A stretch of DNA of 64,000 nt from IMGVR_UViG_3300032116_000004:62001-126000, one strand, 5' to 3'; positions 8,674-39,730 are shown, counted from the first letter of the stretch. The notes: generated from the letters alone by a model not told the origin. Numbers and translations are program-made.

Positions 8674-10233
8674 ATGTTTCTCACATACTTGATGCTGGCT
8701 GTGGCGCTGTGCCTCAGCGCCATCGCCGCATTCTATTCGATCATAGGTCTCACTGCCATATTTGCCGCGGCTGTGATTCCTGTGGCCGTCATGGGAACCA
8801 TATTGGAGATAGCCAAACTAACGGTCACTGTATGGTTGCATGAATACTGGCATCGTTGTAAACGAGCCATGAAAATATACTTGGTGCCTGCGGTGGGTAT
8901 GCTGATGTTGATCACTTCCATGGGCATCTTTGGCTTCCTGTCAAAGGCCCATCTAGATCAAGCAGTTCCCACTGGGGATGTGGCCGCACAAGTGGCCTTG
9001 CTAGACGAAAAGATAAAGACACAGCGAGACAACATCGAAGCCGCCCGACGTGCCCTGGCCCAGATGGATGCGGCTGTGGACCAAACACTCAGCAGATCAT
9101 CTGACGAGAAGGGTGCTGACAAAGCCGCGGCACTGCGCCGTGCTCAGGCCCGTGAGCGTGGCAACCTGCAAGGAGACATCTCTCGCGCACAGACCGAGAT
9201 AGCAAAATTAAACGAACAACGGGCACCCATAGCCGCAAATCTACGCAAAGTAGAAGCCGAGGTAGGTCCAATCAAATACATAGCGGCCTTGATCTATGGA
9301 GACAATCCTGATGCCAACTTACTGGAAAAGGCCGTGCGTTGGGTGATCATAATACTTGTGGTAGTGTTTGATCCCTTGGCCATATTCATGTTGTTGGCCG
9401 CCACTGAGAGTTACAAGTGGGAAAAATACGGTGCTCGAGATGATCCCGATGAACCAGAAAATCCGCCACCTGACAGCCCAGTGATGGATCGCATAAACGA
9501 ATGGCGCGACAAAATAAAAAAATGGAGGCAACCCAATGGTACCAATGCTGATGATGGCCAACCTATTGCCCAGGATCTGGCTAGACAACCTGACAGAGAT
9601 GATGCTGATGTTCAACCCACCGCTCCGATGGTGGCTATCCCACCTACGCAATGGGGCGGGCAAGATCTAACAAAACAAATCGTTGAAAATAATCGGCCCG
9701 GTGAACCTGTTTATGTCGACATGCCGGACATTGTCACTGTGCGTCCGGATGTGCAGTATGTAGGTGATGCCGATGAAGAAGAAACTCCTGAAGAAAAAGA
9801 TCCTGTAAAAAGGGCCAAGCGCCAATGGAAAGCGGACAATCCTGATGACACTTTACACAGACACGAAAAATTGTTGGCACAGGGCAAGATAGAACGACTA
9901 CCATGGGAACAGAGTCTACAACTGCAGGCAGATGATCAAGAACAATATGCCAATGTTGATTTTGGAACACGATTCCCTACAACTCCCGGTCGTGGGGATG
10001 CGTTTATCCGTGTAGATTTCCTGCCAACTAAACTGTTCAAATGGAATGGTGCGAAATGGATTGAAGTGGACAAAGAAATCACTGATTCATTCACCTACAA
10101 TGATGAGTATATCGAATATCTAATCGCCAAGATCGGTTCTGGTGAGTATGATGCTGATCTGCTCAACGAAAACGAAAGACAACAAATAGAAGCTAGGCTA
10201 CGAGATGATCCCAAATTCAACGGTCCAGCATGA
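8674..10233 (+). CDS. Membrane protein with coiled-coil and C-terminal soluble domain
   Basis: Three N-terminal TM helices, long coiled coil, further TM helix; TAAATA at 8663-8668. Confidence 0.75.
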   Translation: MFLTYLMLAVALCLSAIAAFYSIIGLTAIFAAAVIPVAVMGTILEIAKLTVTVWLHEYWHRCKRAMKIYLVPAVGMLMLITSMGIFGFLSKAHLDQAVPTGDVAAQVALLDEKIKTQRDNIEAARRALAQMDAAVDQTLSRSSDEKGADKAAALRRAQARERGNLQGDISRAQTEIAKLNEQRAPIAANLRKVEAEVGPIKYIAALIYGDNPDANLLEKAVRWVIIILVVVFDPLAIFMLLAATESYKWEKYGARDDPDEPENPPPDSPVMDRINEWRDKIKKWRQPNGTNADDGQPIAQDLARQPDRDDADVQPTAPMVAIPPTQWGGQDLTKQIVENNRPGEPVYVDMPDIVTVRPDVQYVGDADEEETPEEKDPVKRAKRQWKADNPDDTLHRHEKLLAQGKIERLPWEQSLQLQADDQEQYANVDFGTRFPTTPGRGDAFIRVDFLPTKLFKWNGAKWIEVDKEITDSFTYNDEYIEYLIAKIGSGEYDADLLNENERQQIEARLRDDPKFNGPA

Positions 10234-11429
10234 AAGAAGATACTTCATACGAACTTTGCAGTTTCTGCAACAAACACAAAGACGATGTTAAAAAACTCAT
10301 AGTGGCCAATGATGTGGCCATCTGCAACGATTGCGTGGATCTTTGCCAAAAACTCTTGCAAGAGGATCCGGTAACGAGAGAACACAATCACACAGACATT
10401 GATCCTCAAGAACTCAAACGTTATCTAGATCAGTATGTGATAGGGCAGGACCGTGCCAAGGTTGTCTTGGCAGTGGCCATCGCCAATCATTACAAACGCA
10501 TACAGAATCGCGATCCTGAAATAGAACTAGACAAGGCCAATATCCTGATGCTGGGCCCCACAGGATCGGGCAAGACCCTGCTGGCTCGCACCGTGGCACG
10601 TTATCTCGACGTGCCTTTTGCCATCGCAGATGCCACTAGCATAACCGAAGCCGGATATGTGGGCGATGATGTAGAAAGTCTCATACAGCGATTGCTCACT
10701 GCCGCTGGTGGCGATGTGGAAAAATGTCGTCGTGGTATAATATTTGTTGATGAAATTGACAAGATCGCTCGAAAAAGCGAATCAACATCTATCACCAGAG
10801 ATGTGAGTGGTGAAGGTGTGCAACAGGCCCTGTTGAAGCTGGTAGAAGGCACAGTATGCCGAGTTCCGGCTGGTGGCGGCCGCAAACACCCTGGTGGCGA
10901 AATGATCGAAATAGACACTGCCAATATACTGTTCATTGCCGGCGGCGCATTCGTGGGCCTAGACCAGATAGTGAAGAAACGACTGTTCGGGTCCTCCATG
11001 GGATTCAATGCTGAAGTCAAAGTATCAGGTGACGTGGATCTACAAAAGACCATGCCCGATGATCTGGTAAAATTTGGTCTGATACCTGAATTCGTCGGCC
11101 GTTTCCCTAGTTGGGTCAGCCTAGATGAACTGACCACGGATGATCTGGTGCATGTGCTCACAGATACCAAGAATTCATTGATACGTCAATATCAACACCT
11201 GTTTGCTTCAGACAGCATAGATCTTGATTTCGAGAACGAGGCCTTGACCACCATAGCACAGCGTTCTGCAGATTTCGGTACTGGTGCCCGCGCCTTGCAC
11301 AGCGAACTTGAGCGTGTGTTGATGCCACACATGTTCGCTATCAAACGCTATCGTGATCGGGGGATAAACCGCGTAGTTATTAACCGAGAGCAAATAAATA
11401 ACCCACAACCCGTTTACAAGGAGGAATAG
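10230..11429 (+). CDS. clpX: ClpX ATP-dependent protease ATPase subunit
   Basis: C4 zinc finger (CSFC..CNDC), GPTGSGKT, AGYVG, DEIDK, RDVSGEGVQQALLK, RKH, MGF loop, GAR. Confidence 0.97.
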   Translation: MKEDTSYELCSFCNKHKDDVKKLIVANDVAICNDCVDLCQKLLQEDPVTREHNHTDIDPQELKRYLDQYVIGQDRAKVVLAVAIANHYKRIQNRDPEIELDKANILMLGPTGSGKTLLARTVARYLDVPFAIADATSITEAGYVGDDVESLIQRLLTAAGGDVEKCRRGIIFVDEIDKIARKSESTSITRDVSGEGVQQALLKLVEGTVCRVPAGGGRKHPGGEMIEIDTANILFIAGGAFVGLDQIVKKRLFGSSMGFNAEVKVSGDVDLQKTMPDDLVKFGLIPEFVGRFPSWVSLDELTTDDLVHVLTDTKNSLIRQYQHLFASDSIDLDFENEALTTIAQRSADFGTGARALHSELERVLMPHMFAIKRYRDRGINRVVINREQINNPQPVYKEE

Positions 11430-11921: not shown

Positions 11922-11925
11922 TATT

Positions 11926-11988
11926 TGTAGGTGCCGATGGTCGGGCCTACATAGTCAACTTGCTTAAAAAAGGAGAATGTTATGACTA
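11926..11988 (+). ncRNA. ROSE-like RNA thermometer in the hsp20 5' UTR
   Basis: Hairpin TGTAGG..CCTACA, then TAGTCA/TGACTA stem enclosing CTTGCTT opposite the AAGGAG SD and covering the start codon. Confidence 0.7.
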
Positions 11989-12419
11989 AAATCACATCTT
12001 TTGATCTCACCCCCTTCTATCGTAATACCATTGGCGTCGACCGCTTGTTCGACCGTATCATGGATCAGTTTGACCATGCCGCGCAAAGCCAGAACTACCC
12101 GCCTTACAACATCCTGAAAACAGGAGAAGACACCTATGAAATCCAGGTGGCAGTGGCTGGGTTTGCCGAAGGTGAAGTGAATGTAGATTTCCATGAAGGA
12201 CAGTTGGTGATCACCGGTGAAAAGAACACCGATGACTCAGAATTGAACTATCTACATCGCGGTATCTCGGCTCGCAAGTTCCTGCGCACATTCCAACTGG
12301 CTGATTATGTAGAGGTTCGCGATGCTGTGATGAAAGACGGCATCTTGAACGTGCATCTACAGCGCATCGTGCCCGAAGAAATGAAGCCAAAGCGTATTGC
12401 AATCTCATACGCAAAATAA
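11982..12419 (+). CDS. ibpA: Small heat shock protein Hsp20 (IbpA-like)
   Basis: IGVDRLF, NYPPYNI, AVAGF, YLHRGIS.RKF.R.F.LA, PEEMKPKRIAI. Confidence 0.95.
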   Translation: MTKITSFDLTPFYRNTIGVDRLFDRIMDQFDHAAQSQNYPPYNILKTGEDTYEIQVAVAGFAEGEVNVDFHEGQLVITGEKNTDDSELNYLHRGISARKFLRTFQLADYVEVRDAVMKDGILNVHLQRIVPEEMKPKRIAISYAK

Positions 12420-27785: not shown

Positions 27786-28131
27786 TCAGGAAATTGACAC
27801 GCATCTTTCTGGGATGGAAATATTCATCGACCACGGCCTTGGCAGTTTCAATATCAAAAGTTCTGCAACTGAACACATCAAAATAGGCCGTGCCATCTAG
27901 TTCCATGAAATGGCCACAGATATTTGATGTGGTGATCAACTGCATGAGGCTGTAGCCCTGTTTGGGGTCTCCGGGCAGGAGATGTTCGATCACGGGTTCT
28001 CCGTGTGCTGTCATATCGATACGATCCACTAGATCCTTGACGAATCTATAGATGTTGTCGCGGTTGGATATAGATTCAATATCACAACCACTACAATCCA
28101 ACATCAGATGATAACCCCAGTGGGAACTCAT
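27769..28131 (-). CDS. speD: S-adenosylmethionine decarboxylase proenzyme (phage type)
   Basis: WGYHL.LDC, QLITTSNICGH self-cleavage region, DVFSC. Confidence 0.85.
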   Translation of the reverse strand: MSSHWGYHLMLDCSGCDIESISNRDNIYRFVKDLVDRIDMTAHGEPVIEHLLPGDPKQGYSLMQLITTSNICGHFMELDGTAYFDVFSCRTFDIETAKAVVDEYFHPRKMRVNFLTRHAD

Positions 28132-28361
28132 TTGGCAGCAGGTTTCTTGGCTCTCACTGCTTTGGCACGGACAGCAGGTTTCTTTTCCCCAGCAGGTTTT
28201 TTGGCAGCCGGTTTTTTCTTAGGCGCCGCAGCCTCGGAGTATTGTGTGGACATAGGTATCACACCAGGTGTGGTCTGTGGTGCTTCAACTTTGTAAGGGG
28301 CCTCTGGGCAAGGACTTACGGTGGGCTTGGAACCAAAAAACTTTTTTAAAAATGCGAGCAT
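28128..28361 (-). CDS. Small Lys/Ala/Pro-rich protein
   Basis: APYKVE plus KKPAA repeats; GGAG RBS; late motif upstream. Confidence 0.7.
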
Positions 28362-28419
28362 TGCAGTCTCCTTTGTTTTATATAGTGTATTTACACAGCA
28401 TATTATCGAAACCTAGCAT

Positions 28420-28443
28420 ATTGCACTGCAATGTAACTAAATA
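28420..28443 (+). promoter_or_regulatory. PhaR-box-like palindrome next to a late-type TAAATA upstream of aceA
   Basis: ATTGCA-C-TGCAAT at 28420-28432; TAAATA at 28438-28443. Confidence 0.55.
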
Positions 28444-28468
28444 TCCTGGCTCAACAGGAGGAAACACC

Positions 28469-29746
28469 ATGCAAGACCGTAGATGGAAGGTATACAAACT
28501 GCAACAAGAATGGACAGAAAACCCGCGCTGGACCGGAATCAAACGTGATTATTCAGCCGAGGACGTGGTGCGTTTGCAAGGTTCCAACCCCATAGAATAC
28601 AGTCTGGCACGGCGTGGCGCCGAAAAATTGTGGCGTTTGCTACATGAACAAGATTATGTCAACACCCTGGGAGCACTCACGGGCATGCAAGCCCTGCAAC
28701 AGGTCAAGGCCGGTTTGAAGGCTATATATTTGAGTGGGTGGCAAGTGGCCGCTGATGCCAACTTGGCTGGCGCCATGTATCCTGATCAGAGCCTGTATCC
28801 CGCAGACTCTGTGCCAGCAGTGGTGCGTAGGATCAACAATGCTTTTACCAGAGCAGATCAGATCGCCTGGATGGAAGACCAAGAAGATCGAGATTTTTTC
28901 GCACCCATCGTGGCTGACGCAGAGGCAGGATTTGGTGGTGTGCTCAATGCGTTCGAACTCATGAAGGCCATGATCGAAGCCGGGGCCGCAGGTGTGCATT
29001 TTGAAGATCAATTAGCGTCCGTAAAGAAATGCGGACACATGGGAGGAAAAGTCCTTGTTCCAACACGAGAAGCCATCAATAAACTTATTGCCGCTCGTCT
29101 CGCTTCTGATGTTATGGGAGTGCCTAGTCTTGTTATTGCTAGAACAGATGCCGAAGCCGGCGATCTTATCACTTCAGATATTGATCCTAACGACGTTCCT
29201 TTTCTTACTGGTGAAAGAACTGTGGAGGGTTTCTATCGGACCCGAGCAGGATTCGACCAAGCAGTCAGTAGAGCCCTGGCCTACTGTCCTTACGCAGATC
29301 TCGTATGGTGCGAAACAGGCAAACCCGACCTCGACTTCGCCAAGCGATTCGCCGAAGCCATACACCGACAGTTTCCGGGCAAGATGTTAGCCTACAACTG
29401 CTCACCATCATTCAACTGGAGGAAGAACCTAGATGCAGACACAATTGGCCGTTTCCAACGTGAACTTGGAGCAATGGGTTACCGTTTTCAATTCATCACA
29501 CTTGCTGGATTCCATGCTCTTAATCATGGCATGTTTGACCTTGCTCATGGCTATGCTAGGGACGGCATGTCTGCTTTCGTGGAGTTACAAGAGCGTGAGT
29601 TCGCGGATGCGAGCCGTGGTTTCGAAGCTGTCAAACATCAGAGAGAAGTAGGAACCAGTTACTTTGACCGCGTGACTACCACAGTGGAGGCTGATGCTTC
29701 CACCCAGGCTCTCAAAGGCTCAACAGAAGAAGAACAGTTCCACTGA
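28469..29746 (+). CDS. aceA: Isocitrate lyase
   Basis: [31 protein letters not shown] catalytic loop, [16 protein letters not shown]; AGGAGG RBS. Confidence 0.97.
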
Positions 29747-29852
29747 TGGCAAGCACTTGGTCTAGAGTATCTCGACGCAAAAAGATCAAATACGCTGTGA
29801 TCTCGGTATTATGGTGTGCAGGTCTGGCCATTGCGATATGGATCAATCTGCA

Positions 29853-30047
29853 ATGATGCGTAGCATTGAACGCATCTGGGCTCGAGCCACAGGTCATGTC
29901 ATGGGCAACACTGACGAAGACCGCCCTAGAGTGCCCATCTTGACCATGAGAGAAGCAAGGGTAGCACTCTGCCTCAAAACGTTCTGGATAGTGATCCATG
30001 TGATCACTTGCGGATTCATAATAGCAAATGTCATAAGGCACTGGTAA
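29853..30047 (+). CDS. Small membrane protein
   Basis: IWARATGH.MG..D..P motif with C-terminal TM helix. Confidence 0.6.
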   Translation: MMRSIERIWARATGHVMGNTDEDRPRVPILTMREARVALCLKTFWIVIHVITCGFIIANVIRHW

Positions 30048-30048
30048 A

Positions 30049-30678
30049 ATGTTAGAAACCATATGTGAAACATTAGTAGAGGCATACCGCCGCAACTGGA
30101 TCACCAGTCGAGACGGCAACGTCAGCATTCGGCATCATGATCGAGATCATTTCTACATCACACCATCAGGAGTGAGAAAGCAGACCCTACAACCAGACCA
30201 GTTCAAGAAGATCATGATTCTTGAAAATGGTCCAGTGTCTCTCTGGCGAGAAGATTATTACACTGACATCAGCGCCAATCTCAAACCCAGCGGCGAGATT
30301 CCTTTGCACTTTGGACTGCAACGACGCATGGGACAACATGCCTCGGAGGTGCGTGTGGTAGTTCACTTGCATCCAACATACTGTGTGGCGGCCATGCACC
30401 GTGGCATCAATTTAGGCGACATTGTTGCGGACTTTCCAGAACTCAGTAGATATACCAAGGTAGCACCCAATGTGGGAGATGTGCCGCCTATAAGCCAAGA
30501 ACTGGCAGATCGTTGCCACGAAAATTTACAATTAGATCAACAAGGCAACATCGCCTTTGACATCGTGGGCATCCGTGGACATGGTGTGGTTGCTATCGAT
30601 ACCTCACCGTGGCGTGCGTTTGAACACATAGAACGGCTGGAACATATCTGCAAGATAGTGTTGGCCTCGGGAGCGTGA
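30049..30678 (+). CDS. Class II aldolase/adducin family protein
   Basis: DGNVS.R, ITPSG, PSGE..LH, HLHP, GHG. Confidence 0.88.
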   Translation: MLETICETLVEAYRRNWITSRDGNVSIRHHDRDHFYITPSGVRKQTLQPDQFKKIMILENGPVSLWREDYYTDISANLKPSGEIPLHFGLQRRMGQHASEVRVVVHLHPTYCVAAMHRGINLGDIVADFPELSRYTKVAPNVGDVPPISQELADRCHENLQLDQQGNIAFDIVGIRGHGVVAIDTSPWRAFEHIERLEHICKIVLASGA

Positions 30679-31289
30679 TGCAGTTCGTCAGCGATCGCGA
30701 CGTGTATGACTCATGCCCACCACAGTGGTTGTGGGTCTATGACAAACTCATAGTGGCACGAAGACAGGGCATCGCCGCTGGACCGGCTGGTATTCCCGTA
30801 CCATGGTCCGGAGAATATGTGATAAGACCTATCACCAACATCCGCATGATGAGTCGAGGTGCGCAGATCGTGTGGATGGAAAAAGGTGACAGTGACACAG
30901 TGCCCGATGGATTTTTCTGGACCCAGGTGCTCGAAGGTCCGCATGTGTCAGTGGACTACCATTGGGGCCAACAGCATCTCACGGTGCAAGGTTTCAGAGA
31001 TGATCCTCGGAGATTGGATCGTTTTTCACGGTGGTGTCGAACGGATTTAGATCGGCCTTTTCCTGGGATGTTGCACGATCTCAAGTATTATCAGGAATGG
31101 ATCAACGTAGAATACATCGGCGATACAGTGATCGAAGTGCATCTACGATACAATGATGATTTCGCCAATCATGATAGTGATGAGATCTGGCCTGTATGGC
31201 CCGAATCCAGCCAACAACAGCCTCCCGGTACACAGTGGTATCACAGCCCTGCTGGTAGTAGATTGGGCTTCTGGATCAAGGATAAGTAA
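30675..31289 (+). CDS. Conserved phage protein, possible ATP-grasp-like fold
   Basis: YVIRPI.N..M, H.SVDY, INVE.I...IEVHLR. Confidence 0.55.
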   Translation: MMQFVSDRDVYDSCPPQWLWVYDKLIVARRQGIAAGPAGIPVPWSGEYVIRPITNIRMMSRGAQIVWMEKGDSDTVPDGFFWTQVLEGPHVSVDYHWGQQHLTVQGFRDDPRRLDRFSRWCRTDLDRPFPGMLHDLKYYQEWINVEYIGDTVIEVHLRYNDDFANHDSDEIWPVWPESSQQQPPGTQWYHSPAGSRLGFWIKDK

Positions 31290-31293
31290 TTTG

Positions 31294-32004
31294 ATGCTCC
31301 TATTCATATACATCCTGGTGATGACACACATCACCATAGCTTGTGTCACACTTTACTTGCATCGTAGCCAGGCACATAGAGGTGTGACATTTGATCCACG
31401 TGTGGCACATTTCATGAGATTTTGGCTGTGGCTCACCACAGGCATGGTCACCAAACAGTGGGTGGCCACACACAGAAAACATCACAGATTCACTGACGCG
31501 GAAGGTGATCCGCACAGTCCGCAAAATGAAGGAATTTGGCAGATTTTATTAGGCGGTGCTTTTTACTATGCCTGGGCCGCAAAAGACAAAGCCATGGTCA
31601 ACCAGTATGGTGTGGGCACGCCCGATGACTGGGTAGAGCGTCACATCTATGCACCATTCAACTGGTTGGGGGTGACCTTGATGTTCTTTATCAACTGCAT
31701 GATTTGGGGCTGGGACTGGGGTTGGTTGCCTTGGCTATGGCAGATGATTTGGATCCCACTGTGGGCAGCCGGCGTCATAAACGGCCTGGGACACTGGTGG
31801 GGTTATAGGAACACTCAAACCAAAGACTATTCCACTAATATTGTGCCCTGGGCATTCTTCATCGGTGGTGAAGAACTACACAACAATCATCATGCTGATC
31901 CAGCTTCGCCTAAACTCAGCCAAAAACCCTGGGAATGGGATCTAGGATGGACTTATATCAAAGGGCTAGAACGATTTGGTTTGGCCTACAACATCAAGTC
32001 TTAG
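31294..32004 (+). CDS. Membrane fatty acid (acyl-CoA delta-9-type) desaturase
   Basis: His boxes HRSQAH, HRKHH, HNNHH; DPHSP. Confidence 0.92.
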   Translation: MLLFIYILVMTHITIACVTLYLHRSQAHRGVTFDPRVAHFMRFWLWLTTGMVTKQWVATHRKHHRFTDAEGDPHSPQNEGIWQILLGGAFYYAWAAKDKAMVNQYGVGTPDDWVERHIYAPFNWLGVTLMFFINCMIWGWDWGWLPWLWQMIWIPLWAAGVINGLGHWWGYRNTQTKDYSTNIVPWAFFIGGEELHNNHHADPASPKLSQKPWEWDLGWTYIKGLERFGLAYNIKS

Positions 32005-32374
32005 AAAACTTCATATTGATCGTGCCACCGGATTCAAATCCGTTCCAAGGCACCACAGTGGCTCCACCGTTTTGGGTCTGTGAGAATCCTGTGCCATTGA
32101 CATCGGCATCCAAGCGGATGGTCTGATCCGTGGGTGCCATCCAGCCACGGTCCATGTATACTCCGGCCATGGGACCATAGGCCACTGAACCTTGCATATA
32201 CCACTGTTCCGGAACTGTCCAAAAACGCAAGGCGTTGGTATTGTTTGGATCAGATGTGGTCCAGGACCATGACTGACCAGGTGCGATAGTAGTTAAATCA
32301 CCCACTGTGTTGTGGTTAACGGTTAGGTTATATTGGGTGTTGTTGACGATGTTGAGTGTAGCAGTCCAAGCCAT
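31994..32374 (-). CDS. Hypothetical beta-rich protein
   Basis: GGAGG RBS; Thr/Asn/Trp-rich. Confidence 0.6.
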   Translation of the reverse strand: MAWTATLNIVNNTQYNLTVNHNTVGDLTTIAPGQSWSWTTSDPNNTNALRFWTVPEQWYMQGSVAYGPMAGVYMDRGWMAPTDQTIRLDADVNGTGFSQTQNGGATVVPWNGFESGGTINMKFSKT

Positions 32375-32429
32375 GCAGTCCTCCATTTTGATAAAATTAC
32401 TTAGCCAAAACACTATTATCTGGGTAGAT

Positions 32430-32465
32430 TAATTATTGTGCAGTGCAATAATTATCATATATAAT
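32430..32465 (+). promoter_or_regulatory. Phasin promoter with PhaR-box-like TGCAGTGCA over the -35
   Basis: TAATTATTG-TGCAGTG-CAATAATTA inverted repeat; TATAAT at 32460-32465. Confidence 0.6.
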
Positions 32466-32473
32466 AGTTCAAA

Positions 32474-32541
32474 GGAGATGCCGCATGGGGCGGGTCTCTA
32501 GCAGTAAACTCGCTTAACTCAAGGAGAAACACTATGTTTAC
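32474..32541 (+). ncRNA. ROSE-like RNA thermometer in the phasin 5' UTR
   Basis: GGAGAT..GTCTCT hairpin, then GTAAAC/GTTTAC stem enclosing CTCGCTT opposite AAGGAG. Confidence 0.6.
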
Positions 32542-32809
32542 ATTAGACGCGACCATCGATGCAGTCCAGACCGGCAAGAAGCAATTTGTCAAGACTTTCG
32601 TAACTGACGAAAAGATTGCCACAGCATTGAATGAGTTCATTGACAACCAATCCGAATATACCAAAAAAGCCGCCAAGGCCACTTTGGATGCTGGCACCAC
32701 GGTTGTGCAAGAAACCATCAAGCATGCCCAGGAAGCCGCTAAATTTGACTATGTCAAATTCGGTGAGGGTATCATGAAAGCCTACACATCCCAGACCAAA
32801 ACCAAGTAA
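32534..32809 (+). CDS. Phasin-like (PHA granule-associated) protein
   Basis: Amphipathic Ala/Lys/Thr-rich helix (IDAVQTGKKQFVKTFV..LNEFID.Q.EYTK); family assignment from memory. Confidence 0.55.
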   Translation: MFTLDATIDAVQTGKKQFVKTFVTDEKIATALNEFIDNQSEYTKKAAKATLDAGTTVVQETIKHAQEAAKFDYVKFGEGIMKAYTSQTKTK

Positions 32810-32837
32810 TTTGGTAAAAAAACGGTTAACCGGTCAC

Positions 32838-32886
32838 TAGACCAAAAATCCTACTTGTGTAATAATACACACATAGTAGGATTTTT
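32838..32886 (+). promoter_or_regulatory. Promoter embedded in a long inverted repeat (may also terminate phasin mRNA)
   Basis: AAAAATCCTACT/AGTAGGATTTTT arms with inner TGTGT/ACACA; TAGACC-17-AATAAT. Confidence 0.5.
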
Positions 32887-32911
32887 TATGACCAATCTTT
32901 AAGGAGTTCGC

Positions 32912-33037
32912 ATGAAGCACTTGGTTTTTGCAGTATTGGTGGCCAGCCTTTTGGTTGGTTGTGGCACGATCGGTGGCGCGGTTTCCGGCGCCGGCCAAGA
33001 TCTTTCCAAAGCCGGAGAATGGATCAAAAACAAATGA
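32912..33037 (+). CDS. Entericidin EcnA/B-like lipoprotein
   Basis: LVGC lipobox, T.GG..SG.GQD...AG; AAGGAG RBS; not in the ORF track. Confidence 0.75.
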   Translation: MKHLVFAVLVASLLVGCGTIGGAVSGAGQDLSKAGEWIKNK

Positions 33038-33714
33038 ACAAGTCAATCCTAGCCATGGCCTTGATCGCCGCCCTGGGTCTTTCGGCCTGTAGTTCTACCA
33101 AGACCACAGACGTAGGTCCCAATCGCACAGTGAACCCAGGCCCACAACAGGCTATCTCTGAGCAACGTGCCGCATCGGACTTCAAACGTGAAGGTGTCAA
33201 AGTCATCTATTCACTGTTGGGTGACCTGGATGCTGTAGAAGCCACTGGCTATGCTCCAGTTCAAGGCAACTCGGAACGTGCAGTGCAATCGGCCACCGAA
33301 GCGGCCTATGTGCTGGCCAAAGATCGCATGAGTTCGTTCTTGCATCCTGAGACCATCAATTCCAAAAGGTTCCTGGACACAGTGACCAAGAATTTAGAAA
33401 AGGCTCGCGACAACAAGACCAACAAGTTCGCCACAAACAAGAATCAGGATTTCGCTTTTGAAACATCTGATGAAGAAGCCGCTCGATCTGGCGAGATCAA
33501 TCGCGAAGAGAACACAGCCGTGCGCAACGATGCTGTGAACATCCAGAGCAATCTACGCAAAACAGTATCTATCCAGCGTTCAGGTATCTTGGGCGGTGTG
33601 GTATTCAAAGAAGGCCGCATCATCAATGATGGTCGCAACGTGCAGGTAACAGTGCGTTGGGATAGGAAAGACAACAGCCAGCGCCGGATCATACTCAATG
33701 AAATGATGCGATAA
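33034..33714 (+). CDS. Lipoprotein (LPP20-like)
   Basis: LSAC lipobox; EATGYA..A...A...AK pattern. Confidence 0.65.
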   Translation: MNKSILAMALIAALGLSACSSTKTTDVGPNRTVNPGPQQAISEQRAASDFKREGVKVIYSLLGDLDAVEATGYAPVQGNSERAVQSATEAAYVLAKDRMSSFLHPETINSKRFLDTVTKNLEKARDNKTNKFATNKNQDFAFETSDEEAARSGEINREENTAVRNDAVNIQSNLRKTVSIQRSGILGGVVFKEGRIINDGRNVQVTVRWDRKDNSQRRIILNEMMR

Positions 33715-39456: not shown

Positions 39457-39527
39457 TTAGGTTTGCGACTGGGATAGTTCAATTGTTCCCACTCTTCGTC
39501 GGTGTAAGGCCACCAATTTAACAGCAT
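39453..39527 (-). CDS. Putative 24-aa micro-protein MLLNWWPYTDEEWEQLNYPSRKPN
   Basis: Overlaps the stop of the upstream small ORF; GGAG upstream; read manually. Confidence 0.4.
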   Translation of the reverse strand: MLLNWWPYTDEEWEQLNYPSRKPN

Positions 39528-39652
39528 TGGCTTTTTTCTCCCATTATACGCTGAGCCGTTTTGTAATTTCCTTGTCGGGCGTGGAAGCTGGCCGCTCTGG
39601 CCCGTGCTATGGATTCAAAAAAACAATATACAGAATTCCAAAAATTTTTCAT
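39518..39652 (-). CDS. 44-aa small protein MKNFWNSVYCFFESIARARAAS...
   Basis: AAGGAA RBS; TATAAATA at 39683-39690 on the minus strand. Confidence 0.6.
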   Translation of the reverse strand: MKNFWNSVYCFFESIARARAASFHARQGNYKTAQRIMGEKSQCC

Positions 39653-39730
39653 CTTTATTTCCTTTCTCATGGTTTCTACTGATATTTATATGTTGCACTA
39701 CCACAAAATGTTAAAATATTATGACAACCA

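What the first reader, a model, noticed from the sequence alone, without database searches (positions are those of the whole stretch)
28420..32809. Candidate PHA-reserve hijack module: PhaR-like boxes on phage aceA and phasin promoters
Seen: ATTGCACTGCAAT (28420-32) abuts the TAAATA upstream of an intact isocitrate lyase (KKCGH). TGCAGTGCA (32439-47) sits inside a longer inverted repeat over the -35 of a phasin-like gene. A degenerate copy (TGGTAGTGCAACA, minus strand, about 39691-39703) abuts TATAAATA before two micro-ORFs. Known: PhaR binds TGC-N3-GCA-type sites, represses phasin genes and is titrated off DNA by PHA granules, and isocitrate lyase channels acetyl-CoA from PHA breakdown into biosynthesis. 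Inference: the phage reads the host carbon-storage state through host PhaR and expresses glyoxylate-shunt and granule proteins when PHA is available. Malate synthase and a depolymerase are not in this window.
Basis: partly seen in the sequence, partly recalled or inferred. Interest (0 to 1): 0.8.

Follow-up and report, generated by a model that had tools for sequence, protein, structure and literature searches.

The report
Host PhaR-type operators on phage promoters
A giant freshwater phage and dozens of its relatives carry, on the promoters of an isocitrate lyase operon and of a very highly transcribed small helical protein, a DNA box that matches the binding site of the bacterial regulator PhaR, which senses stored PHB, so the phage probably ties these genes to its host's carbon reserve.

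Summary
Both palindromes are at the stated coordinates. Plain TGC-N3-GCA is not enriched in the window, but the extended box is real. ATGTTGC-RNY-GCAACAT, or a close variant, lies upstream of the 91-aa gene in 63 of 67 distinct related phages. It fits the published PhaR/PhbF sites of H. seropedicae, C. necator and S. meliloti at every specified position. The same box lies before a bona fide phasin gene next to a bona fide phaR, and is 6-fold enriched upstream of bacterial aceA, mostly Burkholderiales, the phage ICL's closest kin. No PhaR gene was found in 1.74 Mb of related phage DNA. Host PhaR reading these promoters is therefore the best explanation, though untested. The "phasin" call is weak: only sub-threshold Phasin_2 hits and failed profile comparisons. 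The protein is amphipathic and all-helical, and its monocistronic transcript (32473-32888) is the only full-length exact piece in four lake metatranscriptomes. Its 5'UTR is a ROSE-like RNA thermometer shared with the phage Hsp20 gene. The window has no phaC, phaZ or aceB. The host is unknown.

The parts
28419..28433 (.). Box 1: PhaR-type operator tATTGCACTGCAATg, centre 28426, in the divergent intergenic region between the 77-aa minus-strand gene and ICL
   Evidence: The core TTGC-ACT-GCAA is perfect; outer positions -6, +6 and +7 deviate from the consensus. Homologous boxes adjoin NATAAATA before ICL in 20 of 31 distinct phage loci.
28438..28443 (+). TAAATA promoter element of the ICL operon (NATAAATA / T4-late-like type; no -35 hexamer)
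   Evidence: Other TAAATA promoters in the window lack the box.
28469..29746 (+). Isocitrate lyase (aceA), intact
   Evidence: Pfam ICL 360 bits. NCBIfam PRK15063 equivalog 786 bits, cutoff 562. KKCGH motif. Closest cellular relatives are Burkholderiales at 74-81% identity.
29811..30047 (+). 78-aa protein (phrog_1679), in the ICL operon
   Evidence: Syntenic in L008, L086 and L117.
30049..30678 (+). Class II aldolase/adducin-family protein, in the ICL operon
   Evidence: Pfam Aldolase_II 98.5 bits. Follows ICL in many phage loci at 71-82% identity.
30675..31289 (+). 204-aa protein of phrog_3577 (unknown function), in the ICL operon
31294..32004 (+). Fatty-acid-desaturase-family membrane protein, last gene of the ICL operon
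   Evidence: Pfam FA_desaturase 53.6 bits. Follows ICL in more than 20 phage loci and directly precedes the 91-aa gene in 5.
32436..32450 (.). Box 2: PhaR-type operator TTGTGCAGTGCAATA, centre 32443, at -30 from the transcript's 5' end; lies within the longer inverted repeat 32430-32454
32460..32465 (+). TATAAT -10 hexamer of the 91-aa gene promoter
   Evidence: The metatranscriptome contig starts at 32473, 7 nt downstream.
32473..32533 (+). 5'UTR: ROSE-like RNA thermometer. Hairpin 1 is GGAGAUGCCG...CGGGUCUCU; hairpin 2 pairs CUC-G-CUU with the AAGGAG Shine-Dalgarno (SD) sequence, with a bulged G.
   Evidence: Rfam ROSE_3, 26.9 bits, E 5.8e-4, full model length, below the gathering score of 43. 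MFE fold. Covariation over 62 sequences.
32534..32809 (+). 91-aa amphipathic three-helix protein (p91); phasin-like only by weak leads
   Evidence: Negative tests.
32844..32888 (+). Intrinsic terminator of the 91-aa gene
   Evidence: Hairpin of -18.7 kcal/mol, z -6.3, followed by a U run. A 409-nt metatranscriptome contig ends at 32888.
39691..39705 (-). Box 3, degenerate: TGTGGT-AGT-GCAACA. The right half is perfect; the left half matches 4 of 6.
   Evidence: Full boxes occur at the homologous promoter in other phages.
39683..39690 (-). TATAAATA promoter element abutting box 3
39518..39670 (-). Micro-ORF (50 aa) behind the conserved leader AGTAGAAACCATGA; the micro-protein operon
11925..11981 (+). 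Second copy of the ROSE-like 5'UTR, before the phage Hsp20 gene (11982-12419). This promoter has no PhaR box.
   Evidence: Rfam ROSE_3, 24.7 bits, E 1.5e-3. phrog_432 Hsp20, E 1.8e-39. TTGACA-N17-TATAAA promoter.

Best explanation
The palindromes are copies of a 15-17 bp operator with family consensus ATGTTGC-RNY-GCAACAT. This is the binding site of the PHB-granule-responsive repressor PhaR (PhbF/AniA) of Beta- and Alphaproteobacteria. In this roughly 315-kb freshwater phage and its relatives the operator sits on three promoters.

(1) The sigma-70-type promoter of a monocistronic, very strongly transcribed 91-aa amphipathic helical protein. The box is centred at -30, over the -35 region.
(2) The NATAAATA-type promoter of an operon of isocitrate lyase, a class II aldolase, phrog_3577 and a fatty-acid desaturase.
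(3) The promoter of a micro-protein operon.

The phage has no PhaR gene in the DNA examined. The most likely mechanism is therefore that the host's own PhaR occupies these promoters when the cell has no free PHB granule surface. When PhaR is titrated onto granules it leaves the promoters, and this small phage regulon follows the host's carbon-storage state. Isocitrate lyase would then route acetyl-CoA, the end product of PHB breakdown, into biosynthesis. The 91-aa protein may act at the granule surface. Its translation is additionally gated by a ROSE-like RNA thermometer that it shares with the phage Hsp20 gene.

Shown: the sequences, their conservation, the motif match, ICL identity, the transcript ends and the RNA structure covariation.
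Inferred: PhaR binding, repression rather than activation, the granule role of the 91-aa protein, and the metabolic purpose.
For: Conservation:
- Of 67 distinct upstream regions of the 91-aa gene, 45 have a strict TGC-N3-GCA box, 10 have one core mismatch, 8 have an N4 variant and 4 have none.
- The half-sites are fixed while the centre varies: -1 is R in 45/45, +1 is Y in 44/45, -7 is T in 44/45 and +7 is A in 42/45.
- The box occurs in either orientation, as expected for a site bound by a protein dimer.

Specificity:
- High-scoring boxes in 139 loci plus the window fall almost only before p91, ICL and the micro-ORF leader.
- Seven other TAAATA promoters in the window lack the box.
- 38 IMG/VR hits to box+ATAAATAC lie mostly before the micro-protein family; one lies before ICL and one before a p91 homolog.

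Motif identity:
- H. seropedicae PhbF, confirmed by footprinting: TG[N]TGC[N]3GCAA (PMC3206438).
- C. necator (R. eutropha): YTKNTGCRNYGCANMAR, with positions 1-4 and 7 conserved (PMC12849132).
- S. meliloti: WNWDDNYGCRNYGCRNHHWNW (PMC12542648).
- The phage consensus fits all three.

- A Phasin_2 gene (73 bits) lies beside a bona fide PhaR (PHB_acc_N, 101 bits) on a P. veronii plasmid. Its upstream region contains TTTGTTGCGGTGCAATAAT and TTTTTTGCGATGCACAAAT.

Host lineage:
- The closest cellular ICLs are Burkholderiales.
- TGC-RNY-GCA is 6-fold enriched within 300 nt upstream of bacterial aceA: 23 found against 3.8 expected, P 2e-11.
- An ICL-family protein is in the PhaR-repressed module of S. 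meliloti.

No phage PhaR found:
- Pfam scans of window ORFs found none.
- A PhaR profile found only 7 IMG/VR contigs, none of them a p91 or ICL contig.
- tblastn of 20 PhaRs against 1.74 Mb of phage DNA gave a best E of 0.12.

Transcript:
- Exact metatranscriptome contigs cover 32473-32840 and 32480-32888. This places the box at -30.
Against: - No binding experiment has been done.
- The host is unknown, so its PhaR and PHB status are untested.
- The 91-aa protein fails the Phasin_2 gathering score. The best member reaches E 1.2e-4, and a longer homolog scores 19 bits against 24.9. hhalign against three real phasins and a phasin family alignment gave probabilities of 0.1-5%.
- The window's ICL box deviates from the consensus at -6, +6 and +7.
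- Eight relatives have an N4-spaced variant, which a rigid dimer should not tolerate.
- TGC-N3-GCA is not enriched in the window.
- The 91-aa transcript is abundant in lake metatranscriptomes, so any repression is often relieved or is weak.
- The window has no phaC, phaZ, malate synthase or phaR.
- C. necator PhaR can also activate (PMC12849132), so the sign of regulation at the ICL promoter, which has no -35 hexamer, is open.
Confidence: 0.55

Rival explanations
1. The box is a true operator, but it is read by another dimeric regulator. This could be a phage-encoded one located outside the 64-kb window, or a host factor other than PhaR that also controls aceA in Burkholderiales. In that case the regulon has nothing to do with PHB.
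For: Only 64 kb of a roughly 315-kb genome was scanned for PhaR-type and other regulators. The window does encode an HTH_39 winged-helix protein and an Hc1-like protein. The N4-spaced variants hint at a reader with different spacing rules. No publication found here names aceA as a PhaR target in Burkholderiales.
Against: The box fits three independently defined PhaR consensus sequences position by position. The same box stands before a bona fide phasin gene beside a bona fide phaR. The box is conserved across phages whose p91 proteins are only 56% identical, which suggests an outside, conserved reader. The box is also enriched upstream of bacterial aceA, where no phage factor exists.
Confidence: 0.2
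2. PhaR does read the promoters, but the 91-aa protein is not a granule protein. It would be an abundant stress-type or other helical protein, co-regulated with Hsp20 through the ROSE-like thermometer. Possible roles are chaperone-like, nucleoid-associated or virion-associated. Under this reading the 'PHA hijack' shrinks to carbon-state timing of expression.
For: There is no family hit at threshold in Pfam, NCBIfam or PHROGs. hhalign against phasins was negative. Weak Bac_DNA_binding (HU) hits appear in 16 of 35 members, best E 2e-3. The 5'UTR is shared with Hsp20. Structure searches gave only non-specific helical matches.
Against: Phasin_2 is the only family hit repeatedly in two sets of family members: 12/35 and 6/95. 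Among the 100 nearest named Atlas clusters, the Pfam families listed are all PHA-granule families (Phasin_2 69, PHB_acc 4, PHA_synth_III_E 1, PhaP_Bmeg 1; 25 have no common family), at scores of 0.80-0.88. The protein is amphipathic along its whole length. Its charge is near neutral (13 K against 12 D+E), which is unlike HU. A PhaR box over the -35 region is the classical setting of a phasin gene.
Confidence: 0.4
3. The palindrome is part of a general phage promoter class (for example a MotA-box-like middle promoter element or a sigma-54 -12 element), not a gene-specific operator.
For: The left half TGTTGC lies where a -35 or MotA box would be. The phage looks T4-like: it has Hsp20 and NATAAATA promoters.
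Against: Only 2-3 of at least 12 promoter-like sites in 64 kb carry the box. Both halves are equally conserved and the orientation flips between phages. The same box occurs in bacterial aceA and phasin promoters. There is no GG at the -24 position.
Confidence: 0.03
4. The matches are chance palindromes in AT-rich intergenic DNA.
For: TGC-N3-GCA is not enriched in the window. A third 12-mer copy at 33278 lies inside a gene and is not conserved.
Against: Conservation in 63 of 67 distinct relatives, against an expectation of about 3.
Confidence: 0.01

Closest known systems
PhaR/PhbF/AniA-phasin circuit of PHB-storing bacteria (C. necator phaP1, H. seropedicae phaP1/phbF, S. meliloti phaP1/2)
   Same: The operator sequence is the same (TG-N-TGC-RNY-GCAA with AT-rich arms). 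It has the same position over the -35/-10 region of a small, highly expressed helical protein gene. An ICL-family gene belongs to the S. meliloti modulon.
   Different: Here the operators are on phage promoters, and no phaR is seen in the phage. The target protein is half the size of typical phasins and does not meet the Phasin_2 threshold. One target promoter is of the NATAAATA (T4-late-like) type. Binding is untested.
Phage metabolic genes placed under a host nutrient-sensing regulator (cyanophage pstS/phoA with PhoB boxes, NtcA sites in cyanophage promoters, LexA boxes in temperate phages).
   Same: The logic is the same: the phage borrows a host transcription factor's site so that its auxiliary genes follow the host's physiological state.
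   Different: The sensed state would be the carbon storage polymer (PHB granule surface), read through PhaR. I found no such report for any phage in the searched library.
Isocitrate lyase as an auxiliary metabolic gene of huge phages (bioRxiv 10.1101/2025.02.27.640493; marine viromes, PMC4053976)
   Same: An intact aceA on a phage genome of more than 200 kb from freshwater.
   Different: That work reports gene presence (98 ICL genes, 22 with malate synthase) and says nothing about regulation. In this window there is no malate synthase; ICL instead heads an aldolase-desaturase operon behind a PhaR-type box.
ROSE RNA thermometers (Rfam RF02523 ROSE_3) before small heat-shock genes
   Same: A two-hairpin layout in which U(U/C)GCU pairs with the SD sequence and leaves a bulged G. 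One copy precedes an Hsp20 gene.
   Different: The scores are below Rfam's gathering threshold (24.7 and 26.9 against 43). The element is in a phage, and the second copy controls a protein that is not a heat-shock protein.

Membership tests
PhaR/PhbF operator | Palindromic core TGC-N3-GCA | tested here: met
   Present in window boxes 1 and 2 and in 45 of 67 distinct relatives. Box 3 keeps only the right half.
PhaR/PhbF operator | R at -1 and Y at +1, with a single free central base (C. necator and S. meliloti consensus) | tested here: met
   R in 45/45 and Y in 44/45 sites that were selected only for TGC-N3-GCA. Window sites: A-C-T and A-G-T.
PhaR/PhbF operator | Outer positions: T at -7, K at -6, T at -4 and their mirror (TG-N-TGC...GCAA; YTKN...NMAR) | tested here: met
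   Family consensus: T-7 in 44/45, G-6 in 38/45, A+5 in 35/45, C+6 in 36/45, A+7 in 42/45. Window box 2 fits 13 of 14 specified positions and box 1 fits 11 of 14 (sequence).
PhaR/PhbF operator | Lies over the -35/-10 region of the regulated promoter | tested here: met
   The centre of box 2 is at -30 from the transcript's 5' end at 32473. The ICL boxes adjoin NATAAATA.
PhaR/PhbF operator | Bound by PhaR protein and released by PHB | not testable with these tools
   Needs EMSA or footprinting, and reporters in phaR and phaC mutants.
PhaR/PhbF operator | A PhaR is present in the cell (host or phage) | tested here: inconclusive
   No phage PhaR in the window or in 1.74 Mb of related DNA. The host is not identified. 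ICL kinship points to Burkholderiales, where PhaR/PhbF has been characterised in C. necator and H. seropedicae.
Phasin_2 (PF09361) / TIGR01841 phasins | Score at or above the curated threshold | tested here: not met
   The window protein has no hit in Pfam at E 0.01 or in NCBIfam at E 10. The best family member reaches E 1.2e-4, and a 120-aa homolog scores 19 bits against 24.9.
Phasin_2 (PF09361) / TIGR01841 phasins | Profile-level homology to bona fide phasins | tested here: not met
   hhalign probability of 0.1-5% against C. necator PhaP2, its family alignment, and the Polaromonas and P. veronii phasins.
Phasin_2 (PF09361) / TIGR01841 phasins | Small amphipathic alpha-helical protein | tested here: met
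   AF2 model with three helices, pLDDT 81.8. Mean hydrophobic moment 0.34 against 0.196±0.036 in shuffles. This feature is not specific to phasins.
Phasin_2 (PF09361) / TIGR01841 phasins | Binds PHA granules | not testable with these tools
   Needs localisation or in-vitro granule binding.
Isocitrate lyase (AceA) | Equivalog-level score and the catalytic KKCGH motif | tested here: met
   NF011645, 786 bits against 562. KKCGH is read directly.
ROSE RNA thermometer (RF02523) | Rfam gathering score | tested here: not met
   26.9 and 24.7 bits against 43, with full model length aligned. No hit at gathering score in the window or in 12 loci.
ROSE RNA thermometer (RF02523) | SD sequence paired to U(U/C)GCU with a bulged G, preceded by a stabilising hairpin, supported by covariation | tested here: met
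   MFE fold. 91.8% of cells paired; 60 compensatory cells against 16 in shuffles (0 of 500 shuffles reach this); well above the slid controls.
ROSE RNA thermometer (RF02523) | Temperature-dependent translation | not testable with these tools
   Needs reporter fusions at different temperatures.

The most novel reading that the evidence does not exclude
A widespread clade of large freshwater phages uses the host's PHB-granule sensor PhaR as an input to a small viral regulon. The regulon comprises a virus-encoded granule-surface (phasin-like) protein made in very large amounts, an isocitrate lyase-aldolase-desaturase operon and a micro-protein operon. The phage would then detect and exploit its host's carbon store. 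The same analysis implies that aceA is a direct PhaR target in many Burkholderiales.
Probability: 0.35. Interest if true: 0.85.

Novelty: new variant of a known kind. Interest (0 to 1): 0.75.

Why it matters
Phage auxiliary metabolic genes are usually catalogued by presence alone. Cases where it is known how a phage decides when to use them are few; phosphate sensing through PhoB in cyanophages is one example. Here a sequence-defined operator, conserved in dozens of uncultured large phages, points to a specific and testable input: the host's PHB storage state, read through PhaR. If confirmed, this links viral infection to carbon-storage polymers in abundant freshwater Betaproteobacteria. It would also assign a function to one of the most highly transcribed genes of these phages, which is currently unknown, and add aceA to the PhaR regulon of Burkholderiales. 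The ROSE-like element would be a phage-borne RNA thermometer; none is reported in the library searched here.

Tried and rejected
- Enrichment of plain TGC-N3-GCA or of the 13-mer in the window: none.
- An over-loose regex scan: uninformative.
- megablast of 28000-33000 and tblastn of p91 against 50,697 phage records: no match, so there is no cultured relative.
- PDB sequence search with the p91 profile: nothing significant; histone-fold protein at E 0.087.
- AFDB fold search: only non-specific helical matches, best E 0.29; a phasin-domain protein at rank 14.
- hhalign against real phasins: negative.
- Rfam at gathering score on the window and on 12 loci: nothing.
- The upstream region of C. 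necator phaP2 showed no clean box, so it was not used as a control.
- The internal 12-mer copy at 33278-33289: not conserved in homologs, judged to be chance.
- Terminator or hairpin reading of the palindrome: rejected. The loop is only 1-3 nt, there is no T run, and it lies upstream of the transcript's 5' end.
- Sigma-54 and MotA-box readings: rejected (see rivals).
- My first desaturase synteny query was out of frame. It was redone in frame.

Full report
**1. Observation**

- ATTGCACTGCAAT lies at 28420-32. It is a perfect 6+1+6 palindrome, 5 nt before TAAATA and 37 nt before the ICL start codon at 28469.
- TGCAGTGCA lies at 32439-47, inside the inverted repeat TAATTATTG-N7-CAATAATTA, 13 nt before TATAAT.
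- On the minus strand, TGGTAGTGCAACA (39703-39691) abuts TATAAATA ahead of micro-ORFs.

ICL is intact: NCBIfam equivalog 786 bits against a cutoff of 562, with KKCGH present. As bare patterns the boxes are not special. TGC-N3-GCA occurs 20 times against 28 expected, and the 13-mer with up to 3 mismatches is also not enriched. The case rests on position and conservation.

**2. The window**

It is a slice of a large freshwater phage. The same DNA is found on IMG/VR contigs of 104-316 kb. The window encodes:
- both ribonucleotide reductase subunits, DNA ligase, ClpX, ClpP (two hits), ClpS and UDP-glucose dehydrogenase;
- NAD synthase, ribosomal protein S21, an Hc1-like protein and Hsp20;
- a tape-measure-like protein and a virion structural protein.

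No cultured phage record matches it. No PhaR, PhaC, PhaZ or malate synthase domain was found among the window ORFs scanned with Pfam.

**3. The box is conserved and specific**

The 91-aa protein (p91) has about 900 close homologs, all phage, many on contigs of 200-350 kb. I fetched 80 loci and read their upstream regions.
- Of 67 distinct upstream regions, 45 carry TGC-N3-GCA, against 0.043 expected per 140 nt.
- Ten more have one core mismatch, 8 have an N4-spaced variant and 4 have nothing.
- The consensus is ATGTTGC-RNY-GCAACAT. The half-sites are nearly invariant while the central base is free. R at -1 is found in 45/45 and Y at +1 in 44/45, although the sites were selected only for TGC/GCA.
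- Asymmetric variants occur in both orientations. This is the signature of a site bound by a protein dimer.
- In about 0.9 Mb of these loci, every exact TGTTGC-N3-GCAACA is at the p91 promoter.

Phage ICL genes of the freshwater clade form one clade in the tree. Of 31 distinct upstream regions, 20 carry a box-like element fused to NATAAATA, and 10 of those have strict TGC-N3-GCA.

A weighted scan of 139 loci plus the window finds high scores almost only before p91, before ICL and before a conserved leader AGTAGAAACCATGA.

A collection-wide search for the box plus ATAAATAC gave 38 loci. About 29 lie before a 50-58 aa micro-protein family, one before ICL and one before a longer p91 homolog.

Seven other TAAATA-type promoters in the window have no box. 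The box is therefore a gene-specific operator with a small regulon, not a general promoter element.

**4. Whose operator is it?**

Three published PhaR sites fit:
- H. seropedicae PhbF, confirmed by footprinting: TG[N]TGC[N]3GCAA (PMC3206438).
- C. necator (R. eutropha): YTKNTGCRNYGCANMAR, with positions 1-4 and 7 from the centre conserved (PMC12849132).
- S. meliloti: WNWDDNYGCRNYGCRNHHWNW (PMC12542648).

The phage consensus satisfies every specified position of all three. Window box 2 fits 13 of 14 positions and box 1 fits 11 of 14.

It has a Phasin_2 gene (73 bits) beside a bona fide PhaR (PHB_acc_N 101 bits; named PhaR by its sources). Upstream of the phasin gene are TTTGTTGCGGTGCAATAAT and TTTTTTGCGATGCACAAAT. 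A Polaromonas phasin gene has TGGTGC-GAT-GCACCA.

The phage ICL's closest cellular relatives (74-81% identity) are overwhelmingly Burkholderiales. In those bacterial loci TGC-RNY-GCA is 6-fold enriched within 300 nt upstream of aceA: 23 found against 3.8 expected, P 2e-11, in 22 of 78 loci. It often takes the form CTGCTGC-RNY-GCAGCAG. In S. meliloti an ICL-family protein is in the PhaR-repressed module.

A PhaR profile finds only 7 IMG/VR contigs. None of them carries p91 or ICL, and all are 20-50 kb, six of the seven with the match near a contig end. tblastn of 20 PhaRs against 1.74 Mb of related phage DNA gives nothing better than E 0.12.

Host PhaR is therefore the best candidate reader. 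This is inference; no binding was tested.

**5. The 91-aa protein**

- It has no hit at threshold in Pfam, NCBIfam or PHROGs.
- AlphaFold gives three helices with pLDDT 81.8. The fold search is non-specific.
- Phasin_2 is the only family hit repeatedly, but always below threshold: 12/35 and 6/95 members, best E 1.2e-4, and a 120-aa homolog at 19 bits against 24.9.
- The named language-model neighbours that carry a Pfam family are all PHA-granule families: Phasin_2 69, PHB_acc 4, PhaE 1 and PhaP_Bmeg 1, of the 100 listed. Their scores of 0.80-0.88 make them leads only.
- hhalign against three real phasins and a phasin family alignment is negative.
- The protein is amphipathic along its whole length.

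I file it as 'phasin-like by context and weak leads; membership not shown'.

**6. Expression signals**

In four freshwater metatranscriptomes from different studies, the only full-length exact-match pieces across 28300-33000 are the p91 transcript: 32473-32840, 32480-32888, 32481-32784 and 32510-32824. There is also one 172-nt piece in the aldolase gene.
- The 5' end at 32473 lies 7 nt after TATAAT.
- The 3' end at 32888 is at a strong terminator (-18.7 kcal/mol, z -6.3).
- The box centre is therefore at -30, a typical repressor position.

These are assembled contigs, not reads, so the ends are approximate.

**7. A second control layer**

The p91 5'UTR matches Rfam ROSE_3 over the full model length (26.9 bits, below the gathering score of 43). 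So does the 5'UTR of the phage Hsp20 gene at 11925-11981 (24.7 bits).

The fold is a stabilising hairpin followed by a second hairpin in which CUC-G-CUU pairs with the AAGGAG Shine-Dalgarno (SD) sequence, leaving a bulged G. Across 62 sequences, 91.8% of cells pair and there are 60 compensatory cells against 16 in shuffles (0 of 500 shuffles reach this). This is far above the slid controls. It works like a ROSE thermometer, although formal Rfam membership is not met.

**8. Module anatomy**

ICL, a 78-aa protein, a class II aldolase, phrog_3577 and a fatty-acid desaturase are co-directional with overlapping or adjacent ends. No terminator-like site turned up between them in the scan. Aldolase and desaturase follow ICL in many phages, and the desaturase directly precedes p91 in five. 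Both full boxes lie in divergent intergenic regions, so they could also affect the minus-strand genes 28128-28361 and 31994-32375.

**9. Verdict**

The operator reading is strongly supported by comparative evidence. The phasin identity and the 'reserve hijack' physiology are plausible but unproven.

Phage ICL itself is already known (10.1101/2025.02.27.640493). I found no report of PhaR boxes, phasin-like genes or ROSE elements in phages in the searched library. In kind, this is a new variant of 'phage auxiliary genes wired to a host nutrient-state regulator'.

Noticed in passing
window 11925-11981 and 32473-32533; L004-L080, about 70 nt upstream of the p91 gene: A ROSE-like two-hairpin RNA thermometer precedes both the phage Hsp20 gene and the 91-aa gene. 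It is supported by covariation but scores below Rfam's gathering threshold.
   Followed up: yes
L011-L079, about 20-40 nt upstream of the PhaR-type box (for example L020 around 5880): A second palindrome, TTAGTGA-N4-TCACTAA, recurs upstream of the box in many relatives but is absent from the window. It is not a terminator, because it is followed by an A run rather than a T run. It may be another regulator's site.
   Followed up: no
L007, L025, L027, L030, L031, L045, L055, L056 (p91 upstream): An 'N4' variant of the box, ATGCTGCGACCGCACAT, keeps the 17-nt span but moves one base into the spacer. It occurs in both orientations, and L027 carries two inverted copies. No explanation so far accounts for it.
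   Followed up: partly
L221-L258; window 39518-39690 (minus strand): A family of 50-58 aa micro-proteins (motif SYQ..L-D/E-.Y..SK.P..A.E-V/I-E.W) lies behind box+ATAAATAC and a conserved leader AGTAGAAACC, in about 29 phage contigs. It has no Pfam hit. The window keeps the leader and a different micro-ORF.
   Followed up: partly
L140-L219, 50-320 nt upstream of aceA: Burkholderiales aceA promoters contain the PhaR-type box and also other conserved elements: the palindrome GTCTTATATAAGAC and repeats of the type TTTCAYNATGNGAAA. This points to multi-factor control that I did not analyse.
   Followed up: partly
window 33278-33289: The 12-mer GTGCAGTGCAAT, identical to part of box 2, lies inside the 251-aa lipoprotein gene. 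It is not conserved in homologs, so it is probably chance.
   Followed up: yes
window 32912-33037: A 41-aa ORF right after the p91 terminator has a weak Entericidin hit (E 1.2e-4, just below the cutoff). It is followed by a 251-aa lipoprotein-like ORF and a 366-aa ORF that are syntenic with p91 in many phages.
   Followed up: no
window 10230-11429 (ClpX); the other ORFs are not resolved to coordinates: The window encodes a full Clp set (ClpX, two ClpP-family hits, ClpS). It also encodes ribosomal protein S21, an Hc1 histone-like protein, NAD synthase, AdoMet decarboxylase, a Bax1-I protein and a PAAR protein, an unusually rich auxiliary repertoire.
   Followed up: no
window 28128-28361 (minus) and 31994-32375 (minus): Both full boxes lie between divergently transcribed genes. 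The scan finds a minus-strand promoter-like site, TGCACA-N16-GATAAT (32442-32415), that overlaps box 2, so the operator may control both directions.
   Followed up: no
L261-L267: The only IMG/VR contigs with a PhaR homolog are 20-50 kb, and six of the seven have the gene near a contig end. They are probably prophage flanks carrying host DNA rather than phage-encoded PhaR.
   Followed up: no
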